Shown here in pieces: positions 8,054 to 64,000 of a DNA stretch of 64,000 nucleotides (the first letter of the stretch is position 1; each line of letters starts with the position of its first letter). The stretch is from Mizuhopecten yessoensis (Eukaryota). The stretch lies in NCBI RefSeq assembly GCF_002113885.1, contig NW_018404851.1, positions 69,113 through 133,112 of the forward strand, in the 5' to 3' direction. The translations under genes were made by a program, and so were the position numbers. Below the pieces are notes generated by a model, which made no database searches, was not told the origin of the DNA, and was given only the letters and a program-made list of their open reading frames with translations.

Positions 8054-8851
8054 GATATCGAATTGCACATTAATGATATCGAGTTACACTTTTATTTACT
8101 GGCGATATTAACGATATCGAGTTAGACGTTAATTAACTGTCGGTACTAACAATGTCGAGTTACACTTGTATTTACTGTCGGTATTAACAATGTCGAGTTA
8201 CACTTCTATTTACTGGCGACATTAACGATATCGAGTTACATTTTTATTTACTGGCGATATTAACGATATCGAGTTAGACGTTAATTAACTGTCAGTACTA
8301 ACAATGTCGAGTTACACTTTTATTTACTGGCGGTATTAACGATATTGAGTTACACTTTTATTTACTGTCGGTATTAATAATGTCGAGTTAGACTTTTATT
8401 TACTGTCGGTATTAACAATGTAGAGTTACATTTTCATTTACTGGCGGTATTAACGATATCGAGTTACACTTTTATTTACTGGCGACATTAACGATATCGA
8501 GTTACATTTTTATTTACTGGCGGTATTAACGATATCGAGTTACACTTTTATTTACTGGCGATATCAACGATATTGAGTTACACTTTTGTTTACTGTCGGT
8601 ATTAATAATGTCGAGTTAGACTTTTATTTACTGTCGGTATTAACAATGTAGAGTTACATTTTCATTTACTGGCGGTATTAACGATATCGAGTTACACATT
8701 TATTTACTGGCGGTATCAACGATATTGAATTACACTTTTATTTACTGGCGGTATTAACGATATCGAGTTACACTTTTATTTACTGGCGGTATCAACGATA
8801 TCGATTTACCCTTTTATTTACTGGCGGTATCAACGATATCGAATTGCACAT
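8054..8851. repeat. 38-bp minisatellite (GATATCGAGTTACACTTTTATTTACTGGCGGTATTAAC)n, ~20 copies, with degenerate copies from ~7790
   Basis: 38-bp period visible directly (e.g. units at 8075 and 8113). Confidence 0.95.
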
Positions 8852-12422: not shown

Positions 12423-13854
12423 TTCTAAAGTGATTACATATAAAACATCTACAACATTTAGTAGGATAGAGGTACATATGTATGTAAACAATCTAAATGT
12501 ATTACACTGTAAAGCATTACGTAGTTAAACCTATACATTTATTTGTAGGAGTGTCTATTGGAAAAAGAGTTTTATAAGTATGGGCGTTCAAAATGATTCT
12601 GGTGCAGTAGCTTAACTTTTAAAGAACTGTTTACACCACTACCCAAAGCAATGTTGGAAGACGACTGCTTCGAATCCCTGCAGCTGATTCATTGATATTT
12701 CAGTTTCTAAAGCGTGTTTTTGGAACAACCAGTAAAGCGCAAAAATGTTGCTTCACAAAGGAAAGCAAAATGGCTGGAGATCCTCAAAACATGTAAGACA
12801 CAATTGTACGAGAGACGATTTTCTACTGATAGCCAGGGCAATCCTATTGGAATGCCCCAGTAGAACTATTGAACAAGAAAGACAACCAATGAACATATGC
12901 CATGGAAGATTTGTTGTGCTTTTAGAGTTGAACACAAAATGCCTTCCGGGTTTATCACGGCTTAATTGTATCCCAATGTAGCCAAACCAGACATGGATGG
13001 TCAATAAGCATGCATCATTCGAATGGGGAATATTTCAGTTGTCCTGAGGTCTGAGGACAATGTACACATAGTTAAACGTTACAACAACAAAGCCTTTGGT
13101 CTGATGTCTGCAATTCCTTTTTTTATATCGAAAATGCTTTCTGGTCCAAGTACAGATCCTGAAAACCCACCAAAATCAATAATTCTGTCATGTGGTACAG
13201 CATTGCTTTTTTTCTGCGGCCACTCTTTGTATCTGTTTTGTTGAAACAATACCTGGTCAAGATAGGTTTGTCGACAGATATCAATTTTGATTATCTTAGA
13301 CACGTGAATAGTATTGCATTATCAAAGGAAATTGATGCAGTAATCGATTTTATTATAACTGAATAGTTTTATCCAAACAAGACTTTCGCAATTGCACGGT
13401 ACACTCTATCAGAACGTTTTATGTTGAGCGACTTTGACGGCATGTTGATAAAAAAAAACTGTCATCTAGATGGTTTTTTTTTTCTTTTTTTCTTCTTCTG
13501 GATTCCCGACACAAGTCGGAAGTGGTAATTCGTTCATATCATAACTAAACTCACGATGGATTTTGAAATAGGATGGAACACAGCCCTGGAGAGCTGTACA
13601 CTGGAAATGTGTTGATTTTGGAACTGTTCCGTAGGAATATTGCCAAGTTCACATTTGCTTGGCGGATTTCTAAACCTGTATCATATGCTCATCTTTAAAT
13701 CTAATAATAGGCGATAAAGATGCAAAAGTGATGGCGACCATTTTTTAACGATAAACTGTGCTGGATAAGTGAAACTTTGTACATATAGGTTATATTCAAA
13801 GACACCATTAATCATCCCCCCATCGGAAGAGCTGTAAGTTCTAAAGTTTATGAC

Positions 13855-14385
13855 ACAGGAAAGGTCAATAGTCCTATTGTGTTAACATCGGTCTACTATG
13901 TCACAGGAAAGGTCAATATTCTTATTGTGTTAACCTCGGTCTACTATGTCACAGGAAAGGTCAATAGTCTTATTGTGTTAACATTGGTCTACTATGTCAC
14001 AGGAAAGGTCAATAGTCCTATTGTGTTAACATCGGTCTACTATGTCACAGGAAAGGTCATTAGTCTTATTGTGTTAACATCGGTCTACTATGTCACAGGA
14101 AAGGTCAATAATCTTATTGTGTTAACGTCGGTCTACTATGTCACACTAAAGATCAATAGTCTTATTGTGTTAACATCGATCTTCTATGTCACAGGAAAGG
14201 TCAATAGTCTTATTGTGTCAACATCGGTCTACTATGCCACAGGAAAGGTCAATAGTCTTATTGTGNCATTGGTTTAACATCGGTCTACTATGTCACAGTA
14301 AAGGTCAATAGTCTTATTGTGTTAACATCGGTCTACTATGCCACAGGAAAGGTCAATAGTCTTATTGTGTTAACATCGTTCTACT
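13855..14385. repeat. 48-bp minisatellite (ACAGGAAAGGTCAATAGTCTTATTGTGTTAACATCGGTCTACTATGTC)n, ~11 copies
   Basis: 48-bp period. It generates the spurious 16-aa-repeat ORF 13879-14277. Confidence 0.96.
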
Positions 14386-17300
14386 AATTCTGTACAAATG
14401 AAAAATGCTTCTTTGTAAATTCGTAGTCCAGTGTATTATGACTAAATAGAGAGTCAGTGTATTATGACTAAATAGAGAGTCGAATACCAGAAAATGTTCT
14501 CCGTCTGCCGAAGGTCAAGGCCAAAATCGAGGTCATATATCAGTTTCTTTTAATGCTTTTAATTCCATCGTGCAAAATTGAAATACAAAGTTGTAATTCT
14601 GTATCAAAAAGATTCGGTGTTTGTTTGAAATACTATTTAATGAAATTTTCAGAATGGCGAAGTTGTCAAAATGCCGACATAAGTGAGACATCCTGTTAAC
14701 ATAACTGATCTTTGTACGCCCTTGGTTGCTTCAATTCATAATACGGTCACCTGGTGATCCTGATGTACACTCATTTTATCGTCTTTTTCCACCTTTCGTA
14801 TAATTCCTTACAGAAATAGGCAAGAGAGAGAGGGGTTGGAGGTTCACTGAGGTATCTATGTGACCCCAAACTGACCCGATCGATAAATGATAGCCTTGCT
14901 CACCGAGGAGAGGTAACTCCCCCACATCAGCGAATGTGATTCTGTCCCAGGACCACGTAGACAGTTCATCACTTGATTAAGCTGTCATCAAATAGTCTCT
15001 GCAATAGGTCACTAGTTAAAAGGTTGACAAAGGTATCAGTCAATACATAAACGTAGCATCAGTAGGTATACTACAAATGTATATGTATTACGTGTTGATA
15101 ACCTCGTCAAAATGCTAAAACATAATTCATGTTCTGTGTGTGTTGTATACATTGTATATACATGTGTATTCACTTAATCTTCTGTATGTGTTTGTGTGCT
15201 TAATCGTGCTCGTATCAGTGCTGACTTTTAGTGTGTGTTAGTGTACAATATTTATTTACGGTACAATGTTGTACATGTTTTAGTAAAAAAAACATAAATC
15301 TTTTATATTGACTTGGCTTTCAGTCTTTTATTTCTGATGTATTTAATGTTGTTGTTTTATTGAGTTTATCACACTACATGTATACTGCAATATTATTTAT
15401 CTTATCTTATCAAATCTTATATTATTACATATACTTAATCGTCTGTGTGTGTTTGTGTGTAAAATTATACACGCATCAGTGCTGATTTTCTAGGTGTTTG
15501 TACAAAATGTATACGCTATGATATATTAATTTCATGTGTATATAAATTTAATCTTCTGTGTGTGTTTTTGTATACATTATTATATATACATGTGTATAAA
15601 CATTCTGTATGTGTGTATAGTTATATGAGTACTGATTTTCTGTGAGTGTCTCTATGCAGTGTGTATATCCTTATTGTTATGATTTTGTTTGTGTGTATTT
15701 GCTGTGTTTGCAGTACATTGCTATTGATCATAACCTTTTATGCGTTTCGCCAAATGGACGCTTATGATATGGAAGTCTGACCTTTCTACTGGACTACAAA
15801 GGCCAGACACACTTACGGAACTAGGTCAAATATTAGAGTGTGTTTTTACTAACATGTCGACCCAATGTGTACACAACAGTATCGAAGTATTAAACAGTGG
15901 CTAACTTAAGCTTTCACGGAGGTTTTATTTTAGTTGTATTCCGTAGTCTATTTGGTGACCTATAGTACTTGTAAACATTCAAATAACGAGGACAGTATGT
16001 TTTATGTATGAGACACAAAAACATTCAGGTACAACACACAAAAACGTCAACGTTTTGGATGGAAGCAACGACCTACAATATCAATAACTTATCAGAACGG
16101 CAACTACGTTGCAATGAAGCTAACTACAAGCGTGAGCGTTGATCGTATGGACAATTGTGTACCAAAACGGCAAACTCACGAACAGACTCTATACCAAAAG
16201 TCGATAGAAACGACAGCATTTGAAACAAAGAAACATCTGAATAAAGAATAAAAATACCGGAAAGATCCATGGTAATATATTTATATAAAAACATACATAA
16301 AATTGATATGATGCGTTTTTGTAAATTTACAGAATTATAATAACTTTTAAATTACCGTACGTTAATTGATTGTGAGGGTCTCCTAGCAATGCTTTTAATA
16401 CAGTGTCAACGATATTGAATACACTATTTTTATCTGTGTTTGGTTAAATGCAACAATTGCTTTTTCATTCTCTAACACCATCATCAATAAGCAATACATG
16501 TTTTATCATTATTCATTCGTTGACGTGCCGTTCGTTTATCCTGAATGGAAATACCTGGGTTTTGTATCTGTGTGTATGCTAATTTGTTTTAAATAATCAT
16601 AACACTTATCAACATGTCTTATTTCATCAGTTAGCGATACTACCTATTTTCTCGAGCCACGTCTCGAATTGCGATGTCGGCGTACAGTTGTAAATAAGGT
16701 CCAATCTGACCGCGCCCTTACGTTAATGTCGTATTATTCCTATCTGAAAGATGTATGATGCGGTCGCGATCTCTTACTTAATTACCTAAATTATGATATA
16801 AAATGAAAGATGGAACATTTATTTGTATCCAAACCAGCAGGTTACATAATTTTGCTAGAAGAAATATGGTCATGTAGTTCAACAGCCTATTTACATGAGC
16901 CTTTCGAAGGCAAATAATCAACAACGTTTGTTAATCAGATCGTCCAGAGATGTAAAAGAGGTATGTTAGTCTTTTAATAATGATCCATGGTCCATTTTCT
17001 GTTCATTTATTAACATGTTAACGACAATATCTGTGCTGCTATTTCTCGAGACCACATAAGTTCTACTATCTAATTTAAGGTAATATGACTGTTAATAAGT
17101 GACCTCTTCTGACGAAAAAAATATCCTCCATCTTTATGCAGCGCCCAGTTTTGGAATTAAATATGACGTCGTTATTGCAATATATGTAATAAAACAACAA
17201 ATACATGATAGACATTAAACACATACAAAGATATGACGTCATGATAAAACAACACAACATATAAAGATATGATGTGTATGGAATCTGTAGTCATTGTAAC

Positions 17301-46321: not shown

Positions 46322-48125
46322 TTCTACTTTATGTGGTGACGGGGTGGTGTCTACTTTATGTGGTGATGGTGTGGTGTCTACTTTATGTGGGGTTTACTTT
46401 ATGTGGTGACGGTGTCGTGTCTACTTTATGTGGTGACGTTGTGGTGTCTAGTTTATGTGGTGACGGTGGGGTGTCTACTTGTTGTGGTGACAGTATGGCG
46501 TCTACTTTATGTGGTGACGGTGAGGTGTCTACTTTATGTGGTGATGGTGTGGTGTCTACTTTATGTGGAGACGGTGTGGTGTATACTTTATGTGGTGACG
46601 GTGTGGGGTCTAGTTTATGTGGTGACGGTGGGGTGTCTACTTTATGTGGGGACGGTGTGGAGTCTACTTTATGTGGTGACGGTGTGGAGTCTACTTTATG
46701 TGGTGACGGTGAGGTGTCTACTTTATGTGGTGATGGTGTGGTGTCTACTTTATGTGGAGACGGTGTGGTGTCTACTTTATGAGGTGACGGTGTGGTGTCT
46801 ACTTTTTGTGGTGACAGTATGGTGTCTACTTTATGTGGTGACTGTGTGGTGTCTACTTTATGTTATGACGGTGTGGTGTGGACTTTATGTGGTGACGGTG
46901 TGGTATCTATTGTATGTGGTGACGGTGTGGTGTCTTCTTTATGTGTTGACGGTGTGATGTCTACTTTATGTGGTTACGGTGTGGTGTCTACTTTATGTTG
47001 TGTTTACTTTATGTGGTGACAGTGTGGTGTCTACTTTATGTTATGACGGTGTGGTGTCTACTTTATTTGGTGACTGTGTGGTGTCTACTTTATGTTATGA
47101 CGGTGTGGTGTCTACTTTATGTAGTGACGGTGTGGTGTCTACTTTATTTGGTGACTGTGTGGTGTCTACTTTATGTGGTGTCGGTGTGGTGTCTACTTTA
47201 TGTGATGACGGTGTGGTGTCTACTTTATTTGGTGACTGTGTGGTGTCTACTTTATGTTATGACGGTGTGGTGTGGACTTTATGTGGTGACGGTGTGGTGC
47301 CTACTTTATGTGGTGACGGTGTGGAGTCTACTTTATGTGGTGACGGTGGGGTGTCTACTTGTTGTGGTGACAGTGTGGTGTCTACTTTATGTTGTGACGG
47401 TGTGGTGTCTACTTTATGTAGTGACGGTGTGGTGTCTACTTTATTTGGTGACTGTGTGGTGTCTACTTTATGTGGTGTTTACTTTATGTGGTGACAGTGT
47501 GGTGTCTACTTTATGTTATGACGGTGTGGTGTGTACTTTATGTGGTGACGGTGTGGTGTCTACTTTATGTGGTGACGTTGTGGTGTCTACTTTATGTGGT
47601 GACGGTGTGGTGTCTAGTTTATGTGGTGACGGTGTGGTGTCTACTTGTTGTGGTGACAGTATGGTGTCTACTTTATGTGGTGACGGTGTGGTGTCTACTT
47701 TATGTGGTGACGGCGTGGAATCTACTTTATGTGGTGACGGTGTGGTATCTATTGTATGTGGTGACGGTGTGGTGTCTACTTTATGTGGTGACGGCGTGGA
47801 GTCTACTTTATGTTGTGACGGTGTGGTGTCTACTTTATGTGGTGACGGTGTGGTGTCTACTTTATGTGGTGATGGTGTGCTGTCTAGTTTATGTGGTGAC
47901 GGTGTGGTGTTTACTTTATGTGGTTACAGTGTGGTGTCTACTTTATGTGGTGACGGCGTGGGGTCTACTTTATGTGGTGACGGCGTGGTGTTTACTTTAT
48001 GTGGTGATGGTGTGGTGTCTACTTTATGTGGTGACGGCGTGGGGTCTACTTTATGTGGTGACGGTGTGGTGTATACTTTATGTGGTGATGGTGTGGTGTC
48101 TACTTTATGTGGTGACGGATTGGTG
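46322..48125. repeat. 27-bp GT-rich minisatellite (TCTACTTTATGTGGTGACGGTGTGGTG)n, ~65 copies
   Basis: 27-bp period with occasional shortened units. Source of the (STLCGDGVV)n and (VVTVWCLLY)n ORFs. Confidence 0.97.
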
Positions 48126-51100
48126 TTTAGGACCCTTTTTTACTAGTGCGGCCGTGTTGTATACTAATATATACGTTCATGCCGTAGTGAAGATTTCGAT
48201 TTTATATTTTACTTTGTATTTTAACTATGTGGTATTTTGTCCTATAATTTCCATGGTGATGATGTGATATATGTACACTAACTTAGTGGCTACAAGCTTT
48301 AGAACAGTTTATTTGTGTTGTTATGTTCCCATTGGACAAATATACAAGTTCTGAAGTGTACGTAATTGACAACACATACAGTGAACATCTATTAGGTATA
48401 AAGTATTTAACTCGGATTGAAAATCCGTTTACAAAAACAGTACGTTCTTTTTTATCAAATATATATTGATAAGTTAGAATACAAAATAATTTTTATCAAG
48501 GTTTACGTGTTATCATTTCCTTCGTGTTATATATCGTGTTGGCTCTCACCTTTGCAGATGCACCTAAATTTAAGTTCAATATACACATTTTCTTGAGGTA
48601 GAAATTTAACTGTGTAATTAAACTATAAGTGTCCAAGTGTACGGCAAAGATAAGTTTAACATTTATTTATGATGTTAGACATATTCATATCCGCTGGCAC
48701 GTTTATGGCTCGGGGACACTTGATATCAGGAGCAATAAATGTTTGATGACACAATAAGGGATTTTGTAGTGCCGGAAACAATGATCTGACATTAAAGATT
48801 AATATAAGGATGTCGTGAAATGTGTCTTTTCATCAAACGAGAGCATGTCAACGTAAACTTGCTGACAACAACGCCTAAGACATGCGTATATGCATCAGGT
48901 TCACCACATCCTATTCAAATCTAATAAGTCCTATTTATACATAAACCTTCTGTTACTGATATGCAATTTTTACAATTAGCAATACATAAATCAATACAAT
49001 TTTTGAGGAATTCGCAGGAGCTGCCTTATCAGGCGCTTACTACTAAACCTATGCCACCTGGCTAATATCCCCATATGTGTGTATGCCTGCGTGTGTGCTG
49101 GATATGTAATGTGTTCTGTTTCCCAATTATTTCACAACCATTTTGCCTTTCTGGAAAAAAAGAAGAAGATGATATGAAATGAGAATAATCAGAAAGCTAT
49201 ACAAAGAAAAAAATATATTGCACCCTGTACTATGGGACATAAACAAACAAACAAACAAACAACGACAATAGAAACTAAAGAGACATTAATAAGCTTGAAA
49301 CCATTAAATATTTCAAATAACAATATCGATTAGAGGAATTGTATCATCTGTGAATACAATATTTATTACAACTTTACCAGTGTAGTGTATGTGTCTGGTG
49401 TTGAAAATAACGTACTACTTGTAGAGCACTTATTATCGTATTTTATCAGGGTATTGCTGAATTGGCGAACTCGCAACATGTGTTAGAGCAAACTTTTCAC
49501 AGAAACTTAAATCATCGCAATCATAAATTAGCGCACTGTCTAAAACGCGATAGCGTTGGCATTAGAACTACGTTAGATATAGAAGTTAACGATTATCTGG
49601 TGATATGTTTCTCATGCTTGTCATAAAGTAATATTTGCACGCGTCACTATCGATTGTATGTGTTTATTAGGTCGGAAGTTATTTGGAATAGATGGAATGA
49701 ATGTTGATGCGTGCTTTACGTTTTAACTCATAGAATGCGTACTGTTGTAATGTTACACTCGTGTTATACTTCTAGTTGTACTACTAGACAACTTGGCTAA
49801 CTTAAAGCCATCAAATTTCAATAAACATTTAAAATGTGTCCTGAAATTGTCCCAAAAATGAAATGTCATCAGACACTAAAGTTCCTATAGGTAGGACTGG
49901 GTCACGCAAAAAAACTCAATGTCATGGGCGAGATAGGCCTAGCGTATCCTGTATACATGATATCTGTCAAAGTCACAAACAATGATGAGGATAAAGGGGC
50001 ATGATTGAGAGGTTTACTTGTAAAGTTATACGAGGTTTCGCTGTTCCTATCCCAAATATACTAAACCTTGTCATTTTTGATTGATCTCACGACAATCTAA
50101 CAATAGAAACTATTGTACTGTTGATCTATTTATGAACATTATTAAAGCGATACACATCTCCACTAATCCTGATATAAAACATAGGAGATAACTGCATGCC
50201 AAATGGTACATATCCTAGAGGAAACGTCAACATAGCTGTCATTACATCAACGTTTTTGTTTTCGAGAGAATTTCGATTTCTTTGACTTCCTCATGCATAT
50301 GAAGTAATTATTTCAAAATACCCAAAGTGAAATTTAGATAGGAAAGTCCATACAGAAAACCAAACAAATTATAGACCTGTACTGTAGTCTATTGTCACTA
50401 CGCTATCAGTTAATAACCAAAAGTATAGAAGCAGCTATTTTGATTAAGTATTTTGGACCCAAGATTAGTAATAGAGTTCAAAGTAATGAAAATCCTAAGA
50501 CAAATCCAATAAATACGTCAAAAATACGACATCACTTGGTGGGGCTATACATTTTTAACAATTGACTACAACAGATGGTATAGCATGTAACTGGTACTGA
50601 CAGTCTGCATTTCAGACACATGAAGCAGCTTACCTCAGGGAATGATAATCCATTAGCAGAGTCAACAACATTGAGACGAAAATATAATGTTCAGAAATAA
50701 AAAGTGAAGAATCGATTATGTTTGAATTCAATAATTGTTTTGCTGTTTCTTGTCCATTTAGGACTTATCAATGGAATTAAATGTTAAATGAATGGTTACA
50801 TATTCATGCTGAAAGATAATCAATAAGGTCAATATAGTTACTCATCGTTTACGTTGTCAATATTATCAAAGGAATAAGGGGAGGTAACGACGTTTTTAAA
50901 CCACACTAATTAATTGTCAGCTTGTATTACGTTTCTAATCATATGTAAAAGCCGGGCAAAGGGAAAATGTGTCTTTTAAACCACCTTTAGACTATCATGT
51001 TTACAACTTTTGACATAATATATCCAGTACACTACCATCAACTATTTACATTTCCTTGTACAGCACTTAGATAAACTTACCAACCAAAAATATGTTCAAG

Positions 51101-54232: not shown

Positions 54233-55489
54233 TTACCAAAGTACATGTATACTAGCACCTTTATGACATACATGTGATATATGTACATACACGTTAATAA
54301 CTTAATACCAATGTACTTGTATAATTTCGTAGTCTGTTTTGTTACAGCGTGAACATCTTGCTGATAACTAAATATCATAAATCCTTCTTATAGTTCTCAA
54401 TCTAGCTAAACACGTGTCAGGCTGTTAACTACGTACTGTCCCATTTATTTAAACCAAAAGTTCAACATGATTCAGCACGTCATTAGTTGTTATGACAAAC
54501 CCACGTAAAAAGACAAATCTGCGAACGGAAAAGAAATTAATCGATATCGTGTTTTGTGTCAAAAAAGTAATTACGCTTCATTCAACTTGGCCGTCAACGG
54601 AAATGTAAAGGTGTAGTCACGCCTAAACTCAAAACGCCACAAACAGTGACGACAAGCACTCCTGCAAAACTATAACAGAGTAATTGAACGACAATTTTCC
54701 AAACAAGATTTGTGATTAGATGTTTTCATCAAAACAATAAGCAAACGCATTCATATCATGCAGTCTCATTGTCTTTATTTGTTAGTTTAATATACAGAAT
54801 GCGAACAAGTGTTCTTTGTTAATAGATTAATAATGAAATGTTTTTTTATCGTGCAACTAGTACTTGCGATGAATGTCATTGATACGCATACTTCGATAGG
54901 CATCATTCAACATCGATAATTGTTTACGTACACATGATTAATGCATAGGTAGCACAAACACCCGGAGTTAAAATAGATAGCACTTATTATTAATTACGTT
55001 TAGGACGTACTTTTGTCAACCTGGATAAAATGGTGAAACATGTGTTATGTTCGTTACTTTCTCTGTATATTACGTCTGAAGCAGTGAGGGGATACCATTT
55101 GGCTGACCTCCATCCTCGCTACCTCGGTCGTTGACCATGGAGGCAGACAAACTAATACGTAACTAAAATAAATGTTGCAAAGTTGAGAACATATCATTGT
55201 GACGGACATTCTAGGCGGTAGTAACAACGCCTTGCATGTTAATTACATGTTAAAGTGAAATAGGCAACAGTTTTGCACTCTCATGTTTATGTATAGACGT
55301 ACGTGCTTTAAAGGATACATAGCACCAACGTTCATACACCTATTCAGTATTCATATCATAATTTATTAAAATGGAGGATTTATATGTAAACCGTCAATCG
55401 GGGAGCAAACCACGTAACTACTGCACGAGAAATTGTTAAAATAAATATATTTATTTATACAACTGTAGTTATTTTAGTTAATGTTTATC

Positions 55490-57078
55490 GCTTCACATGT
55501 AGCTGTAGGTATATACAGTATTACATGTTTATATTTACACGTGTAGCTGTAGATAATATTATGTACAGTAATACATGTTTATCTTTACACGTGTAGTTGT
55601 AGATATGTACAGTAATACATGTTTATCTTTACACGTTAAGCTGTAGGTATATACAGTAATACATGTTTATATTTACGCGTGTAGCTGTAGATATGTACAG
55701 TAATACATGTTTATCTTTACACGTTAAGCTGTAGGTATATACAGTAAGACATGTTTATATTTACACGTGTAGCTGTAGGTATATACAGTAATACATGTTT
55801 ATATGTACACGTTAAGCTGTAGGTATATACAGTAATACATGTTTATCTGTACACGTGTAGTTGTAGGTATATACAGGAAGACATTTTTATATTTACACGT
55901 GTAGCTGAAGATTAGTAGAATCTATCGCTACTGGTTGTGTAATATAGAGAAACCTCAACCCGAGGACTAAGATTTTTTGTCCAGAACGAGGCTTGCCGTG
56001 TGTACTGTAATAAATGTTAATCTTAACACGTGTAGCTGTAAGTATGTACAGTCATACATGTTTATCTTTACACGTGTAGCTGTAGGAATATTCTGTAATA
56101 CATGTTTATCTTTACACGTGTAGCTGTAGATGTGTACTGTAATAAATGTTAATCTTTACACGTGTAGCTGTAGGTGTGTACTGTAATACATGTTAATCTT
56201 TACACGTGTAGCTGTAGGTATGTACAGTAATACATGTTTATCTTTACATGTTTAGCTGTAGGTGTGTACTGTAATAAATGTTAATTTACACGTGTAGCTG
56301 TAGGTATGTACAGTAATACATGTTTATCTTTACATGTGTAGCTGTAGGTATATACAGTAATACATGTTTATCTTTACACGTGTATCTGTAGGTATATTCT
56401 GTAATACATGTTTATCTTTACACGCGTAGCTGTAGATGTGTACTGTAATAAATGTTAATCTTTACACGTGTAGCAGTAGTTATGTACGTACTGTATCTTT
56501 ACACGTGTAGCTGTAGGTATATTCTGTAATACATGTTTATCTTTACACGCGTAGCTGTAGATGTGTACTGTAATAAATGTTAATCTTTACACGTGTAGCT
56601 GTAGGTATGTACAGTAATACATGTTTATCTTTACACGTGTAGCTGTAGGTGTGTACTGTAATAAATGTTAATCTTTACACGTGTAGCTGTAGTTATGTAC
56701 GTACTGTATCTTTACACGTGTAGCTGTAGGTATATTCTGTAATACATGTTTATCTTTACACGTGTAGCTGTAGATGTGTACTGTAATAAATGTTAATCTT
56801 TACACGTGTAGCTGTAGGTGTGTACTGTAATACATGTTAATCTTTACACGTGTAGCTGTAGGTATGTACGTACTGTATCTTTACACGTGTAGCTGTAGGT
56901 ATGTACAGTTATACATGTTTATCTTTACACGTGTAGCTGTAGGTATATTCTGTAATACATGTTTATCTTTACACGTGTAGCTGTAGGTATGTACAGTAAT
57001 ACATGTTTATCTTTACACGTGTAGTTGTAGGTACATGTATGTACTGTAATAAATGTTTATCTTTACACGTGTAGCTGT
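55490..57078. repeat. 44-bp minisatellite (TTTACACGTGTAGCTGTAGGTATGTACAGTAATACATGTTTATC)n, >30 copies, interrupted at ~55910-55998
   Basis: 44-bp period (e.g. units at 56111 and 56155), with a recurring shorter variant unit. Confidence 0.96.
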
Positions 57079-58340
57079 TCATATATATTGTAATATATCT
57101 TTATCAATTGACCTGTCATAAGTTATTGTTTCTTATATGTTTATTGATTTTGATAAAACTTCATCAGTACCCGTGTAGTTATACGTATTTATTTGATAAT
57201 TGTTTACCGCTACCCTTGTTATTGTTCGCATATAATTCGATATATTTTTATTTGCGACAAATAATGTTTTACGTATTTATCTAAATAATTACAAATGCAA
57301 TTGACTTATATCGATTGTAATATACATGCTTATCGGTACAAGTGTTGTTGTTAATATAAATATTAATTCATATTTTGAAAGTCAAATAACTTATAACGTT
57401 CTTAAAGAAACAAAAACTGCATTTTATGATTGACATGATGCAGACAACCTGTATGCCCTTAAACTGACAATTCAGGTGGGGTCTGTTGCATGCCACTTGA
57501 TATGTTAAATATCGTGTATCTTGTCCTGGTAAATGTAAATGCATTGGTGATGAATCATATACAGGTTACAAGCATGCAGGTGCACACATATTTGCATAGC
57601 AAAAGAATGCAAGTGAATTTCAAACCCTAACGAATATAGTTGTGTAGTATACTCGTAGTCAGTTTAATGGAAATAAATACAATCTCATCTTTATATTTAG
57701 ATATTAAGATATAATTTTAACATAGTGTTTACTCAACAATATGCAAACGGACAAATATTGCGGTGAACTTAACATTGTGTTACGTTACGTGTTTGTTACT
57801 TGCTTTGTCTAATGTGGTTTTTTTTTGGTAATGTACTGTGATAATGATCGTAATACTTTCGTCGACTAAAGCCAAAATGTCATTATATGAAAAAATTGTA
57901 AACCTCCTTATTTTCAAGAATATAGAATTTAGTCAGATTCAGAATGCTATATAAATAATAATCTCAGCATTCGTTCGTGTTACCTCATGAAAGAATAGTC
58001 CTGTTGCAGTAACTTACCACTTTGCATCCGATAAACGTTTATTTTTAGGCTGCGAAAGCTAGGGTGTTAAAAATCGCTTTTTGGAATAAATTCAGTTTTA
58101 AGTGTTGAATCTAGGAAACACATTTTAATAGCATTATCACTATATACGAACTGGAATCGATTCGATCTATTTACAATGTTAGTAAATTTTGATATGAATG
58201 TTATACATTACTGGATCACTCCTATTACACGTATTATCGCTATCGTCGTATTTATTATCGAGGTAACTGCTCTTAACAACAGCTGTCATCAGGTGTCTTT
58301 AGCAATGGTTCCGGGTTAAGCCTCGTTAACTCCAACAGAT

Positions 58341-59130
58341 GTCCTTTATCACAGCCGTGTGTGTAGGCCCTGTAACAATAAGTTATAAATAAACAACGTC
58401 CTTTATCACAGACGTGTGTGCAAACCCCTGTAACAACAAGTTATAAATAAACAACGTCCTTTATCACAGACTTGTGTGTAGGCCCTATAACAACAAGTTT
58501 ATAAATAGACAACGTCCTTTATCACAGACGAGTGTGTAAGCCCTAAAACAACAAGTTATAGATAAACAACGTCCTTTATCACAGACGAGTGTGTAGGACC
58601 TATAACAACAAGTTATAAATAAACAACGTCCTTTATCACAGACGAGTGTGTAGACCCTGTAACAACAAGTTATAAATAAACAACGTCCTTTATCACAGAC
58701 ATTTGTGTAGGACCTATAACAACAAGTTATAAATAAACAACGTCCTTTATCACCGACTTTTGTTTAGGCCCGGTAACAACAAGTTTATAAATAAACAACG
58801 TCCTTTATCACTAACGAGTGTGTAGGCCCTTTAACAACATGATTATATATAAACAACGTCCTTTATCACAGACGTTTATGTAGGCCATGTAACAACAAGT
58901 TTATTAATAAACAACGTCAGTTATCACAGACTTGTGTGTAGGCCCGGTAACAACAGGTTTATAAATAAACAACGTCCTTTATCACAGACTTGTGTGTAGG
59001 CCCGGTAACAACAGGTTTATAAATAAACAACGTCATTTATTTATCACAGACGAGTATGAATAATCAACGTCCAATATCACAAACTTGTGTGAAGGCTCTG
59101 TAACAACAAGTTATAAATAAAACAACGTCC
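58341..59130 (-). repeat. 57-bp minisatellite, ~14 units; each unit = putative 3' splice site + 6 codons + TGA on the gene strand
   Basis: Minus-strand consensus GACGTTGTTTATTTATAACTTGTTGTTAYAG|GGC CTA CAC ACW CGT CTG TGA TAAAG. Confidence 0.92.
58349..58369 (-). CDS. Putative terminal micro-exon of the Hv3-like gene (GLHTRL*), class I PDZ-binding C-terminus
   Basis: Acceptor TTATTGTTACAG; phase 0 matches the donor after ..DLAE. This is the only unit followed by unique, 3'UTR-like sequence, with a minus-strand AATAAA at 58251-58256. Which array unit is actually spliced is unknown. Confidence 0.5.
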   Translation of the reverse strand, partial: GLHTRL

Positions 59131-59538
59131 GATATCTTTATAAACAAGGAATTGTTATAATTCGGGAACAACATAACTAATGCTTCAGTACATGTTGGTT
59201 AGATAGAGTAGTCTGTTTTGAAATAGTGTTGTGTTATGTTATCGCTATAAAGATGTTTCACAGTAATTGTTTGATATTATTTTAGACAGTACAGAACATT
59301 TTGGATCTTATCCGCAATAGTATGTCAGGCGCCGCTTCGTGGATTACTTGTACATAGTGGGATGGATGCAGTAATAACACTTCCTATTCAACTGTCCTTA
59401 TAAGAAATGTTTATAAAAGAAACAGAACATATCAGACATCAAAATTAGACGCATCGCCTTTTGATATATATGAATAAAACACACCATCAATTTTACATCA
59501 CAGAAATAGGCAATGGTATATGAAACAACATCACCAAC

Positions 59539-59876
59539 CTCGGCAAGGTCTGTAGTGTTCATCTGGTCATATCTAGGTGGTTTAGAACTGTTGCTTGTAC
59601 CGTCAAATGTAAATACTCGTGTTCCACTATTAGGACTATCCATAGGATCAGGCGAGAGACTAAAGGTGACAGGTCCTGACAGCTCACTCTCCGACGATAT
59701 GGACCTTAACAACTGTGCAATGCTGTTGGTTCTACCGATCTGTTTGTCTTCTTCCTCCTCCTCTGATGAGGCTTCGTGCAGGTCAGGAACGCTGGTTCCC
59801 ACCGCACCAATCATGGCTAAAGAGGCAAAGCTTGATAGCACCGGAAACAAACTGCTGCTGCGGCGACGCTGCTTCA
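59539..59876 (-). CDS. Hv3-like proton channel, C-terminal low-complexity exon (vKQRRRSSSLFPVLSSFASLAMIGAVG...SEEEEED...KPPRYDQMNTTDLAE)
   Basis: Acceptor CTTGCTGTTTCAG; phase 1 matches the previous exon (G|TG = Val). 112 open codons, GC-rich. The donor GAG|GTTGGT is inferred and weaker; without splicing the frame runs on to a stop at 59398. Confidence 0.8.
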
Positions 59877-59913
59877 CTGAAACAGCAAGGGTACGTGTAA
59901 CCTTGTAGTCATG

Positions 59914-60059
59914 CAATAACCATGACAGAAAAACCTCTCGTTTACAGCCACAATAACTATGACAGAAAAACCTCTCGTTTACAGCCCCAATAACCATGAA
60001 AGAAAAACCTCTCGTTTACAGCCACAATAACCATGACAGATAAACCTCTCGTTTACAGC
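59914..60059. repeat. 37-bp intronic tandem repeat, 4 copies
   Basis: (CAATAACCATGACAGAAAAACCTCTCGTTTACAGCCA)x4. Confidence 0.93.
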
Positions 60060-61839
60060 TACAACTTTTTTCAGTTCAAAAGTCAATGTATATATGTTGT
60101 TGACACTCGATCCCATTAAGGTATAAATCATGGTATAAACAGTGATAAGTCGAGGTAAGATGTGTAACTGACATTGAACTCTAGGTAATTGCATGTATCA
60201 GTCAATCATAATTGTAATCTGTAATTGGCCATATAGTACTTGTCTTGTTTATTCGCGGATGCATGTATTTATGTTTTTGGCCAGTTAGTCCCCCAAAGAC
60301 CATTATAACGAGTTAAGAAATGAACGTAAATCAATTAAATCGATTTAATTGGCGCAAAGTATAAATAATAGTAAGGTTTAAATGGAGACTCTGGAAAGTC
60401 TGCAAAGATAATAAAACCTGGAGCTCCGACAGAATAAGCGTATTCTGCTTCTTTGTAACTCCATATAAATCTTAGTTAATTTACGACATTAAAACCAGGC
60501 CCGGTGAGGGGTTTCAAACACCAAAAATCACACGTATGAGCAATATTAAAAACGACGATTTCCTTATTCCAGAAAACAACAGAATATTCTCAAATATGTT
60601 CCCGATGTTAGCCATATAGTTTACCCATAGTCGTTAATAATCAGAAAATCTTGTAAACCTGTGTCAGAATTAATCGTTATCTGTTAATGCCACGAATCAA
60701 ATCGGTGAACATCGAACCAAACGCATTGTGTAAACACTGTAGGCGGGGAATCAGTAATGCGCTTTATAGAAATAGAACATTTATGTTCGGAAAAAATTTA
60801 TCATACAGCTGATAAGTAACGTGTCCTAGTGTGCCATGTTGTCAGTAAAGACCAGGGTAAGCGGCTGATGTAGAGGTGGTTATGGCCATGTTTTCTGATT
60901 TTCTAAGACACCATATCGTTGGACTCGGCAAGCTCTTTCCTAACCTGTCATAGTAAGATCATCGACAAATTCAGCCTCATTTAAAGACACGGACAATTCG
61001 ACCATACACATAGTCAGGGTTGTTTCTAAGGGTAGCCTTCGTGTAACAATCTGCTGAAAACGTACCTCTGGTATTGGAGCACAAAGTTTGACGGCAAATC
61101 CGACAGTATGTCAAGTTACATGTAAGTGGCATTTCTAGATTATTGCTTAACTTACAATTGCCATAGTTACAGATCATTTGAAAATATAACTAGTTGTAAT
61201 ACAGAGATGCAGAAATATCATTTTGTTTCGTTTTCGTATTGATGACAGAATCAACTCTTACAGTGATACCTCAAGGATAAACTTCACTAGGAAAGCTAGT
61301 CTGGTTTCTCCCATATATCAAGTATCGATACTTAGGTACACCGATATGTCGAACATAGTCAATGTTACATATAGTTTCTAATGTCGGTCTCTGTCATCGT
61401 CTGTGTTACAAACGCGAAATTGTTTATACTTAACCTGTCAGCGGTAACTGTATATATGTCATTCTATTTTAACTGGACATCGTAGGTCAAGTTCTATTTT
61501 TGCCACTGACCACGACGTGACCAGTGAGGGTCATTGTGTATTATACTAAAAGGAAACAGGTAAGCACGCTTCTCTGCCTATTTCTCTGAGGTATTGTTAT
61601 GGTTCTCCTATAATTAGAGGCAATTAATAAAGCATATCAAAATCAGTGTCATAAATTTAGTTATCGTTATATATGGCAATATTTTACATAATATTTTTTT
61701 AAAAATCGGTATTATAACAATGAAGCATAACCGCGACTAAATAAGTGCGCCGTCGCATATGTAGGATAAAACCCCCCAGCCAAATGGAAAATACAACAGC
61801 AGAAAAAAACAACCTATATCATCTTATGAAAACAAGGTA

Positions 61840-63064: not shown

Positions 63065-63447
63065 CTTTTCAATCAGAAAAACAGCCAATAACACCGACAG
63101 CAAATCGTAACTATAAACCTGTTTGATCGTATACACACATACCTGACTTGACGTTCATTAAAGTGTTTTGAGTATATATTTTGCAATAATTCCAAATTTG
63201 AGTTAATAGTTATTTTTATAAACACTTTTCCATTAGTAAACGCTTCTAATTAAAACAAACAAATTCAATTACGGAATGTAAACAAACATTTATTGGATGT
63301 CAAAAAAAAAGAAGTAGATAAGAAACAGGGCATACACATTAATATACCAACAAGACGAGGACTCAAATTTAGTTGATTTATTAATTTGAATTTATTTAAG
63401 TGTTTAAATTCCTTGCAGCAATAATCAATATCAATAAAAGTAATTAC

Positions 63448-63586
63448 TATTGACTATCCTGATGATTCTCCACGGTAAGATGATGATGAGGATGGTTGCA
63501 GCTTCGGTGCCCGGATGTGCCCAGATACCTTCCCAAAATGCAACATCGAGACACCAAGAAACGGTGACGACAAACGCGTCAAAAAC
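63448..63586 (-). CDS. Voltage-gated proton channel (Hv/HVCN1-TMEM266 family, Hv3-like) S3-S4 exon (VFDAFVVTVSWCLDVAFWEGIWAHPGTEAATILIIILPWRIIRIVN)
   Basis: S3 has two Asp 11 residues apart (human Hv1 D174/D185 equivalents). S4 has WRxxRxxN (W207/R208/R211/N214 equivalents). Acceptor ..TTTGAAG, donor A|GTAATT, 139 bp. The S1-S2 exons lie beyond the window. Confidence 0.92.
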
Positions 63587-64000
63587 CTTCAAATTTAAAA
63601 TACATAACGTTAGTTGATTTTAATAGCAAGCGAGAAAAAGTTAAATCTGGGCTTATCCTTTCATCAGTAGATCAAAAGCGAATAACGATTTTCTTTAATT
63701 CTCTGTAGGAACATTCTTGACAGACAACAAGCGAGAAAATTTAAAGATGTGAGCAAGGTGACCCAATTGGAAATCAGCTTTCTAGGGTATTGGTAGGCTA
63801 TCCCAGGGTAAGGCAAACTACGTAGATTATAGATATCAACTTTGTTAACTACCTACTTAAATCAATTGTTTTGTTGTGTATGCCTTTTCCTGAATAAACA
63901 TCATTACTATTATAAGCATGAGAAAACAACATCAAATACGAAAAATCAAGTACAAATGGGTTAGCTATGATTTGATAGAGATGTTAAAGATCTATAAAAC

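What the first reader, a model, noticed from the sequence alone, without database searches (positions are those of the whole stretch)
58341..59130. Minisatellite built from a terminal micro-exon: a tandem set of alternative PDZ-ligand C-termini for a proton channel
Seen: on the gene strand each 57-bp unit is T-rich tract + AG + 6 codons + TGA, in the phase (0) left by the upstream exon (..NTTDLAE|). In transcript order the units give: SLHTSL* (59097-59077, CAG); a truncated unit; three with destroyed acceptors (CCG, CCG, CAT); GLHTR* (AAG); one destroyed (CCG); VLHKCL*; GLHTRL*; VLHTRL*; GLHTRL*; GLHTSL*; a +1 frameshifted GFAHTSVIKDVVYL*; and finally GLHTRL* (58369-58349), which runs into unique sequence. 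Nine units keep AG and six end in T-x-L. Several between-unit changes are synonymous (GGC/GGT, CTA/TTA/CTT, ACA/ACT, CGG/CGT, CTG/TTG). Established: C-terminal S/T-x-hydrophobic is the class I PDZ ligand. Inference: the intron-exon-stop junction was amplified, so acceptor choice or copy-number variation could switch the channel tail between PDZ-competent and PDZ-null forms and change 3'UTR length. I know of no description of this arrangement, but could not search.
Basis: partly seen in the sequence, partly recalled or inferred. Interest (0 to 1): 0.85.

Follow-up and report, generated by a model that had tools for sequence, protein, structure and literature searches.

The report
Tandem decoy copies of last exon
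The last intron of a Yesso scallop proton-channel gene holds about 13 tandem copies of the gene's own six-codon final exon and its splice acceptor, but the assembled RNA I could examine joins only to the last copy, so this is an already described type of repeat ("mirage" minisatellite) and shows no sign of switching protein tails.

Summary
Window 58347-59132 (minus strand) is a 57/58-bp minisatellite of 13 full units and one truncated unit. Each unit holds 28 nt of intron end (branch-like TTATAAC, T-rich tract, AG), 6 codons, TGA and 8 nt of 3'UTR.

The gene is Mizuhopecten yessoensis LOC110446922, an Hv3-type proton channel (LPWRIIRIVN). Its annotated protein ends ...DLAEGLHTRL. The six-codon terminal micro-exon is real and old: Pecten, Ylistrum and Aplysia have it as a single copy behind the same phase-0 intron. 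Of 68 molluscan homologues, 54 end in T-[KRH]-[LM] (52 of them T-[KR]-L), which fits the class I PDZ-ligand pattern.

The "alternative tails" reading is not supported. Spliced RNA contigs from two studies join 59539 only to 58369, the last unit. The array is then intronic, and 3'UTR sequence follows to below 57100. Upstream units look decayed: 4 of the 13 full units have lost the AG, and the codons vary three times more than the intron-like part.

The unit occurs nowhere else in the genome. Such splice-junction minisatellites are already described (amphioxus "mirages", human F7 intron 7). Earlier notes of this scan report several in this genome, on other DNA. Minor or tissue-specific use of other units remains untested.

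The parts
59539..59876 (-). Penultimate coding exon (..VKQRRRSSS...NTTDLAE), ending in phase 0
   Evidence: Sequence. RNA contigs cover 59538-59878 and continue into the upstream exon (loose end at 59878). It is 77% identical to residues 371-482 of the Ylistrum orthologue.
58370..59538 (-). Last intron as spliced in the RNA contigs (1169 nt, GT..AG); it contains the whole array except the coding part of the last unit
   Evidence: The joint 58368/59538 skips 1169 nt, with ends CT..AC on the + strand (cut +1), in X1 (depth 485) and X3 (depth 5.5), which come from two studies.
58404..59132 (-). Units u1-u13 of the 57/58-bp minisatellite: unused copies of acceptor + 6 codons + TGA + 8 nt of 3'UTR (decoy or pseudo terminal exons)
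   Evidence: No joint to any of them appears, where only low-depth contigs (11-27) lie inside the array and one (record 6) runs unspliced through the donor. Four of the 13 full units (u3, u4, u5, u7) lack AG, as does the truncated u2.
58347..58403 (-). Unit u14: the functional 3' splice site (CAG at 58372-58370), the terminal micro-exon coding GLHTRL (58369-58352) and the stop TGA (58351-58349)
   Evidence: RNA joint. The annotated proteins end GLHTRL. The downstream flank ATCTGTTGGAGTTAA matches the Pecten maximus 3'UTR ATCATTTGGAGTTAA.
57100..58348 (-). 3'UTR: a minimum extent, since it continues below 57100 towards the 44-bp minisatellite at 55481-57078
   Evidence: X1 record 1 covers 57100-58368 without a break at depth 485 and overhangs the laid stretch by 51 nt. 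X3 records 8-10 also lie here.
59128..59131 (-). GGAC just before the first unit in the intron; the same GGAC ends every unit in the 3'UTR-derived part (microhomology at the duplication boundaries)
   Evidence: Direct reading..ATCGGAC|GTTGTTT at the 5' edge and ..AAGGAC|ATCTGTT at the 3' edge.
63431..63592 (-). Open frame holding the S3-S4 exon of the same gene, with the Hv3 signature LPWRIIRIVN (these are ORF limits, not exon limits)
   Evidence: The same motif is present in all orthologues examined. The motif is described in PMC10377628.

Best explanation
This is a lineage-specific 'mirage' minisatellite. In the Mizuhopecten lineage a 57-bp segment spanning the 3' end of the last intron (branch-like TTATAAC, T-rich tract, AG), the six codons of the terminal micro-exon, the stop and 8 nt of 3'UTR was duplicated in tandem and expanded to about 13 copies. 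The first duplication probably arose between two GGAC microhomologies; that step is inferred. The spliceosome joins the donor at 59538 to the outermost, last acceptor (58370/58369), which alone is followed by the ancestral 3'UTR. The whole array is therefore removed as intron and the protein keeps its ancestral tail GLHTRL; this step is shown by the RNA contigs. The upstream copies are unused pseudo-exons drifting neutrally; this is inferred from lost AGs, a premature stop, a frameshift and higher variability in the codons than in the intron-like part. The array has stretched the intron from roughly 320-360 nt to 1169 nt with no effect on the product that I could detect. The functional element is the single micro-exon, which gives this Hv3-type channel the family-wide C-terminal T-[KR]-L. 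That tail is most likely a class I PDZ-binding motif of the CFTR DTRL type used for membrane scaffolding; this is inferred from the pattern alone.
For: The RNA joint 59539 to 58369 appears in contigs of two studies. Exon and 3'UTR have high depth (485-920 in X1), against 0-27 across the intron and array, and no other joint is seen. Annotated proteins OWF53052.1 and XP_021347941.1 end LAEGLHTRL, and the locus carries no isoform labels. Pecten maximus and Ylistrum balloti have a single micro-exon and no array. Aplysia has the same phase-0 intron and a 6-codon exon, DSNTRL*. The unit is found only at this locus. The coding columns vary 0.124 per column per unit against 0.044 for the intron-like columns (Fisher p = 0.0007), and 8 of 16 codon variants are synonymous against 35% expected (p = 0.16, not significant). 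About 12% of the window is tandem arrays, 20 in all. Mirage repeats that do not disturb splicing are described in PMC3087553, and silent pseudo-sites in the F7 intron 7 VNTR in PMC1557585. Of 68 homologues, 54 end T-[KRH]-[LM], and 52 of those end T-[KR]-L.
Against: The RNA evidence comes from assembled contigs, which drop rare isoforms. Tissues are unknown, and X3 is only guessed to be RNA, although its GT..AG joint argues for it. The two raw-read runs gave no reads at all, so they are no test. Eight upstream units keep an AG, and u9 has an acceptor context almost identical to the used one, so why they stay silent is unexplained. TGATA is invariant in all units (chance about 0.005) and the intron-like half is well conserved. 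That could mean homogenisation or some constraint on the array itself. PDZ binding of the tail was not tested.
Confidence: 0.8

Rival explanations
1. Alternative terminal exons: different units serve as acceptors in some tissues, stages or individuals. This would give tails such as SLHTSL, VLHKCL, VLHTRL and GLHTSL, or the same GLHTRL with a longer 3'UTR that contains part of the array.
For: Nine units keep AG behind a near-identical T-rich tract, and six of them keep T-x-L. u9 and u11 encode exactly GLHTRL. Contigs cannot show rare isoforms, and the raw runs were uninformative.
Against: No joint to any other unit appears in two studies. Depth inside the array is at most about 5% of the 3'UTR depth in X1, and record 6 there is unspliced RNA running through the donor. 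There is a single annotated product. The codons are more variable than the non-coding part, and several units are broken. Single-copy orthologues show that the array is not needed. Earlier notes of this scan on other arrays in this genome report use of only the last copy; I did not check them.
Confidence: 0.1
2. Cis-regulatory decoy array: the repeated branch/T-tract/AG modules bind U2AF or U2 without being spliced. They would slow or tune removal of the last intron, or 3'-end formation, and so set the channel's expression level. Copy number would act as a dial.
For: The intron-like half and the TGATA-AAGGAC junction of the units are better conserved than the codons. Unspliced RNA through the donor is detectable at about 1-2% of exon depth.
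Against: Unequal crossing-over homogenises arrays without any function. The array is absent from two other scallop genera. The retained-intron signal is ordinary pre-mRNA background. The mirage literature reports no effect on splicing.
Confidence: 0.06
3. Assembly artefact: the copy number, or the array itself, is an error of a fragmented draft assembly (82,659 contigs).
For: It is a draft assembly, and minisatellites are often mis-sized in such assemblies.
Against: The units differ by many substitutions in a consistent register. RNA contigs from an independent sample reproduce 58456-58648 and 58960-59567 with no differences. Six runs of unrecorded type, likely DNA, hold 75-86% of the words of the region.
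Confidence: 0.03

Closest known systems
'Mirage' minisatellites of amphioxus (Adh3, globin genes BflGb6 and BflGb9; PMC3087553)
   Same: Both are tandem, minisatellite-like duplications that span an intron-exon boundary. Many units keep the splice signals, the regular mRNA is still made from the authentic junction, and the units are 81-100% alike with more divergent edge units.
   Different: This one is in a mollusc. The unit (57 bp) contains the entire coding part of a terminal exon plus its stop and the start of the 3'UTR, so each copy is a complete pseudo terminal exon and not just an exon start. Copy-number polymorphism was not tested here.
Human F7 intron 7 37-bp VNTR with silent 5' pseudo-sites (PMC1557585)
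   Same: A minisatellite whose edge unit spans the exon-intron boundary creates a row of identical splice sites. Only the outermost one is used, so the array stays intronic.
   Different: F7 is on the donor side, where the most upstream site is chosen. Here it is on the acceptor side, where the most downstream site is chosen. The Aplysia homologue of this gene has the F7-like donor-side version in the same intron.
Tandem exon duplication giving alternative or mutually exclusive exons (e.g. Dscam1 clusters; from my own knowledge)
   Same: The origin is the same: tandem duplication of an exon together with its splice signals.
   Different: In those systems several copies are spliced and kept under selection. 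Here only one copy is seen in RNA and the others decay.
Class I PDZ-binding C-termini of epithelial transporters, e.g. CFTR ...DTRL binding NHERF1 (established knowledge, not tested here)
   Same: The terminus is X-T-X-L-COOH. Several molluscan Hv3 homologues end in exactly DTRL or DTKL, and the scallop protein ends in HTRL.
   Different: No PDZ partner is known for any Hv channel of this family. The two Hv papers I searched do not mention PDZ.

Membership tests
Mirage (splice-junction) minisatellite | Tandem repeat whose unit spans an intron-exon boundary of the host gene | tested here: met
   The unit is 28 nt of intron end with AG, 18 nt of coding sequence, TGA and 8 nt of 3'UTR. The last unit is the junction actually spliced, and orthologues have it once.
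Mirage (splice-junction) minisatellite | Regular splicing still uses the authentic junction; the repeats stay silent | tested here: met
   The only joint is 59539/58369, seen in contigs of two studies. Rare use cannot be excluded with contigs.
Mirage (splice-junction) minisatellite | Length instability or polymorphism between haplotypes | not tested
Alternative 3' terminal exons / tandem alternative acceptors | Two or more of the copies are used as acceptors in mature mRNA | tested here: not met
   No second joint appears in X1 or X3. X21 and X24 gave 0 reads, so they are no test. For rare isoforms the result is inconclusive.
Alternative 3' terminal exons / tandem alternative acceptors | Purifying selection on the encoded peptides of the copies | tested here: not met
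   The codons are 2.8 times more variable than the intron-like part (p = 0.0007). The synonymous share is 8 of 16 against 0.35 expected (p = 0.16). A stop, a frameshift and lost AGs are present.
Hv3-type (unconventional) molluscan voltage-gated proton channel | S4 signature xPWRxxR (LPWRxxR) lacking R1 | tested here: met
   LPWRIIRIVN is in window ORF 63431-63592 and in P0079. The motif is defined in PMC10377628.
Hv3-type (unconventional) molluscan voltage-gated proton channel | Voltage-sensor fold of four helices, with an acidic selectivity residue in S1 and a long S1-S2 loop | tested here: inconclusive
   Pfam Ion_trans scores 21.6 bits, below the cut-off of 25. S1 with ..SALDASC.. is present in P0079 and P0001. 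No structure was predicted.
Hv3-type (unconventional) molluscan voltage-gated proton channel | Proton-selective conductance | not testable with these tools
   This needs electrophysiology. Only Aplysia AcHv3 has been measured (PMC10911540).
Class I PDZ-binding motif | C-terminal X-[S/T]-X-hydrophobic-COOH | tested here: met
   The protein ends ..HTRL-COOH. Of 68 homologues, 54 end T-[KRH]-[LM].
Class I PDZ-binding motif | Binding to a PDZ domain | not tested
   No partner is known, and no complex prediction was run because no specific pair could be named.

The most novel reading that the evidence does not exclude
The silent copies are not always silent. In some tissue, stage or genotype the donor at 59538 joins upstream units, so that one gene makes channels with PDZ-competent tails (SLHTSL, VLHTRL, GLHTSL) and PDZ-null tails (VLHKCL, GLHTR, the frameshifted tail), or the same tail with an array-bearing 3'UTR. 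Copy-number variation would then change the mix. That would make a mirage minisatellite caught in the act of becoming a set of alternative terminal exons.
Probability: 0.08. Interest if true: 0.6.

Novelty: new member of a known kind. Interest (0 to 1): 0.27.

Why it matters
As it stands the finding matters little for the channel: the protein is unchanged and the array looks like a tolerated by-product of a genome in which about 12% of this window is tandem repeat. Two things are still worth keeping.

First, it is a clean natural test case for 3' splice-site choice. Nine near-identical acceptor modules lie 57 nt apart and only the most distal is seen in use. This mirrors the human F7 donor array, and the Aplysia homologue carries the donor-side version in the same intron.

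Second, the work exposed a family-level feature that the two Hv papers I searched do not mention. Molluscan Hv3-type channels almost all end in T-[KR]-L. In scallops and Aplysia this tail is encoded by a conserved six-codon terminal micro-exon. That makes PDZ scaffolding of these leak-type proton channels a directly testable idea.

Tried and rejected
- Dispersed repeat or transposon origin: rejected, because the unit occurs only at this locus.
- Read-through of the donor to the stop at 59398: only a low-depth unspliced contig (depth 11.7 against 794) supports it, which fits pre-mRNA.
- Splicing to an exon outside the array: rejected by the joint itself.
- Raw-read RNA runs X21 and X24: 0 reads laid, so no test.
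- Search for scallop transcript fragments with other tails, using the exon as query in the length-limited protein search: only three distant fragments, none from this species.
- Exact-product look-ups for P0079, P0016 and P0007: not on record.
- Argopecten irradians genome: no GLHTRL-type micro-exon within 10 kb downstream of the donor, although transcripts in its protein cluster end SEGLHTRL. This is unexplained and was left.
- Peroxisomal PTS1-like reading of T-K/R-L: considered and set aside, because these are multi-pass membrane proteins and T is not a canonical first residue (my own knowledge).
Exons were searched by reference and the full-length proteins came from the databases.
- Complex prediction: not used, because no specific PDZ partner could be named.

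Full report
**1. What is there**

On the minus strand, window 59132-58347 is a tandem array. Tandem Repeats Finder gives period 58, 12.2 copies, 88% matches and score 1020 for 58341-59040. Cutting at the invariant TGATA gives 14 units, one of them truncated to 33 nt.

Each full unit reads AAGGAC / GTTGTTTATTTATAACTTGTTGTTACAG / 18 nt / TGA / TA.

The 28-nt core of the unit occurs ten times in the 988-Mb genome, all inside this array. A 360-nt piece of the array matches only itself. It is therefore a local amplification and not a mobile element. The window as a whole is very rich in such arrays: 20 arrays cover 12% of its bases.

**2. The gene**

The exon 59876-59539 ends ...NTTDLAE in phase 0 and is followed by GT. 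A profile-free search with this exon found full-length proteins. The family search then gave the scallop's own annotated products, OWF53052.1 'Voltage-gated hydrogen channel 1 [Mizuhopecten yessoensis]' and XP_021347941.1 (LOC110446922). Both end ...NTTDLAEGLHTRL.

The S4 motif LPWRIIRIVN lies in the window (ORF 63431-63592) and in all orthologues examined. It is the signature of the unconventional Hv3 group of molluscan proton channels. That group is reported to be much expanded in bivalves, with up to eleven Hv genes found in this very species (PMC10377628). Pfam Ion_trans is only sub-threshold.

**3. The micro-exon is real, old and normally single**

- In Pecten maximus the penultimate exon ends ..ELAE|gtaagt. 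About 320 nt further on comes ..cacattgcag|GGT CTC CAC ACA CGT CTA TGA, once.
- In Ylistrum balloti the intron is about 360 nt and the exon GGT CTC CAC ACT CGA CTT TGA is again single.
- Neither locus has a comparable tandem repeat.
- The Pecten 3'UTR start (TGATAGAGGACATCATTTGGAGTTAAG) matches the sequence after the last scallop unit (TGATAAAGGACATCTGTTGGAGTTAAC).

So the unit ends 8 nt into the ancestral 3'UTR, and the last unit is the one still joined to that UTR. At the other edge the ancestral intron reads ..ATCGGAC|GTTGTTT. GGAC therefore stands at both breakpoints, a microhomology that can explain the first duplication (direct reading; the mechanism is inferred).

In Aplysia californica a homologue (LOC101862058) has the same phase-0 intron six codons before the stop..ttccag|GAC AGC AAC ACT CGG CTG TAG. 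The six-codon terminal exon therefore predates the split of bivalves and gastropods.

**4. The tail**

Of the 68 homologues from bivalves, gastropods and cephalopods, plus a few outliers, 54 end in T-[KRH]-[LM]. The commonest endings are STKL, NTRL, HTKL, HTRL, DTKL and DTRL. The 14 exceptions look like truncated or read-through models.

This fits the class I PDZ-ligand pattern. DTRL is also the C-terminus of CFTR that binds NHERF1 (established knowledge). Neither Hv paper that I searched mentions PDZ. Binding was not tested here.

**5. Which unit is used**

I laid contigs of two RNA data sets from different studies, and raw reads of two further runs, on 57100-59900.

- X1 and X3 each contain one joint, 58368/59538. 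It skips 1169 nt with GT..AG ends on the gene strand.
- In X3 a single 868-nt contig runs from 400 nt of unique 3'UTR (57969-58368), across the joint, through the whole penultimate exon and 127 nt into the exon before it. That upstream exon sits at about 62612-62535.
- The acceptor is therefore the last unit (exon start 58369), and the whole array is intron.
- In X1 the exon has depth 794-920 and the 3'UTR 485. The intron and array have 0-27, carried by short contigs without joints, and one of them reads straight through the donor (unspliced RNA).
- No joint to any other unit was seen.
- The raw-read runs X21 and X24 gave no reads at all on this stretch and are no test.

Contigs drop rare variants. 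The safe statement is that the last unit is the dominant acceptor in two samples, and that other units are used at a few percent at most in X1.

**6. Are the silent units under selection?**

- The 18 coding columns carry 0.124 non-consensus cells per column per unit. The 26 intron-like columns carry 0.044 (Fisher p = 0.0007).
- Among 16 distinct codon variants 8 are synonymous. For these codons 35% would be expected from random single changes (p = 0.16).
- Four of the 13 full units (and the truncated one) have lost AG, one has a premature stop and one a frameshift.
- The units nearest the 5' edge are the most divergent (78-85% to the others), and units u8-u14 are 86-95% alike. This is the usual picture of an array homogenised in its body.

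There is thus no sign that the peptides of the upstream copies matter.

One oddity remains. TGATA is unchanged in all units (chance about 0.005), and the junction GTGATAAAGGACGTTG is the best-kept part.

**7. What it is**

Tandem repeats that span an intron-exon boundary were named 'mirages' in amphioxus. There they occur at both donor and acceptor sides, often keep AG/GT signals and do not disturb regular splicing (PMC3087553). The human F7 gene has a 37-bp VNTR whose first unit spans the exon 7 donor, and the following identical pseudo-sites stay silent (PMC1557585).

Earlier notes of this scan say that several such arrays were found elsewhere in this same genome, on other DNA, and that only the last copy was used where RNA was examined. 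I took the term and the two comparisons from those notes and checked them in the papers. I did not re-examine the other loci.

The present array is a further member of this kind. Its one peculiarity is that the unit holds a complete terminal coding exon with its stop.

**8. How it most likely works**

- *Shown:* the unit structure, its local origin, its absence from two other scallop genera, use of the last acceptor, and 3'UTR sequence running on to below 57100.
- *Inferred:* a GGAC-mediated first duplication, followed by expansion through slippage or unequal exchange. Expansion was tolerated because the outermost acceptor is chosen and the product does not change, and the silent copies then decay neutrally.
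- *Not explained:* why upstream acceptors as good as the used one (u9 differs from u14 by one base in the T-rich tract) stay silent. The only systematic difference is what follows the stop, namely unique 3'UTR in place of another unit.

**9. Verdict**

The micro-exon, the PDZ-like tail and the amplification are right. Alternative tails are not supported, and the claim that the arrangement is undescribed is wrong.

Interest is low to moderate. The useful remainders are a natural nine-acceptor ladder for studying 3' splice-site choice and the family-wide T-[KR]-L tail of Hv3 channels.

Noticed in passing
L008:64827-65073 (Aplysia californica, LOC101862058): The donor side of the same last intron is a 30-bp x 8.2 tandem array (94% matches). 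Each unit is the last 27 nt of the penultimate exon (..SYHIAVSKT) plus GTA, which gives eight in-frame copies of the 5' splice site ACT|GTAAGT. The gene model uses the first one. It is a mirror image of the scallop case, in a homologue of the same gene.
   Followed up: partly
L008:65125-65485: The rest of that Aplysia intron, up to the terminal micro-exon, is a 73/86-bp repeat (about 4.7 copies) of T-rich, branch-like sequence that does not include the exon.
   Followed up: no
L007:31215-41254 (Argopecten irradians): No GLHTRL-type micro-exon lies within 10 kb downstream of the conserved donor, although transcript-derived proteins of the same cluster (P0013, P0082) end SEGLHTRL. The RefSeq model P0081 instead reads through the donor (..SEVGNGDNPISLKI). 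The intron holds two inverted 21-bp arrays (L006 25765-26189 and 27212-27551), which may be an insertion.
   Followed up: partly
window 55481-57105: A 44-bp x 36.6 minisatellite lies where the 3'UTR of the channel mRNA is heading. The X1 contig that carries the 3'UTR runs 51 nt past 57100 towards it, so the mRNA may carry this array in its 3'UTR.
   Followed up: no
window 1-64000: Tandem Repeats Finder lists 20 separate tandem arrays covering about 12% of the window (for example 8069-8849, 13849-14386, 46323-48126). Minisatellites are a routine feature of this genome.
   Followed up: partly
window 58347-59132: Within the units the stop and following bases (TGATA) never vary, and the junction GTGATAAAGGACGTTG is the most conserved part, while the six codons are the most variable. 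This is unexplained; homogenisation or a sequence preference of the expansion process are both possible.
   Followed up: partly
window 59914-60064: A 37-bp x 4.1 repeat ends 37 nt upstream of the acceptor of the penultimate exon (59877). It does not include the exon boundary.
   Followed up: no
proteins P0001-P0077: Molluscan Hv3-type homologues almost universally end in T-[KR]-L, and several end in DTRL, the CFTR-type PDZ ligand. The two Hv family papers I searched do not mention PDZ.
   Followed up: partly
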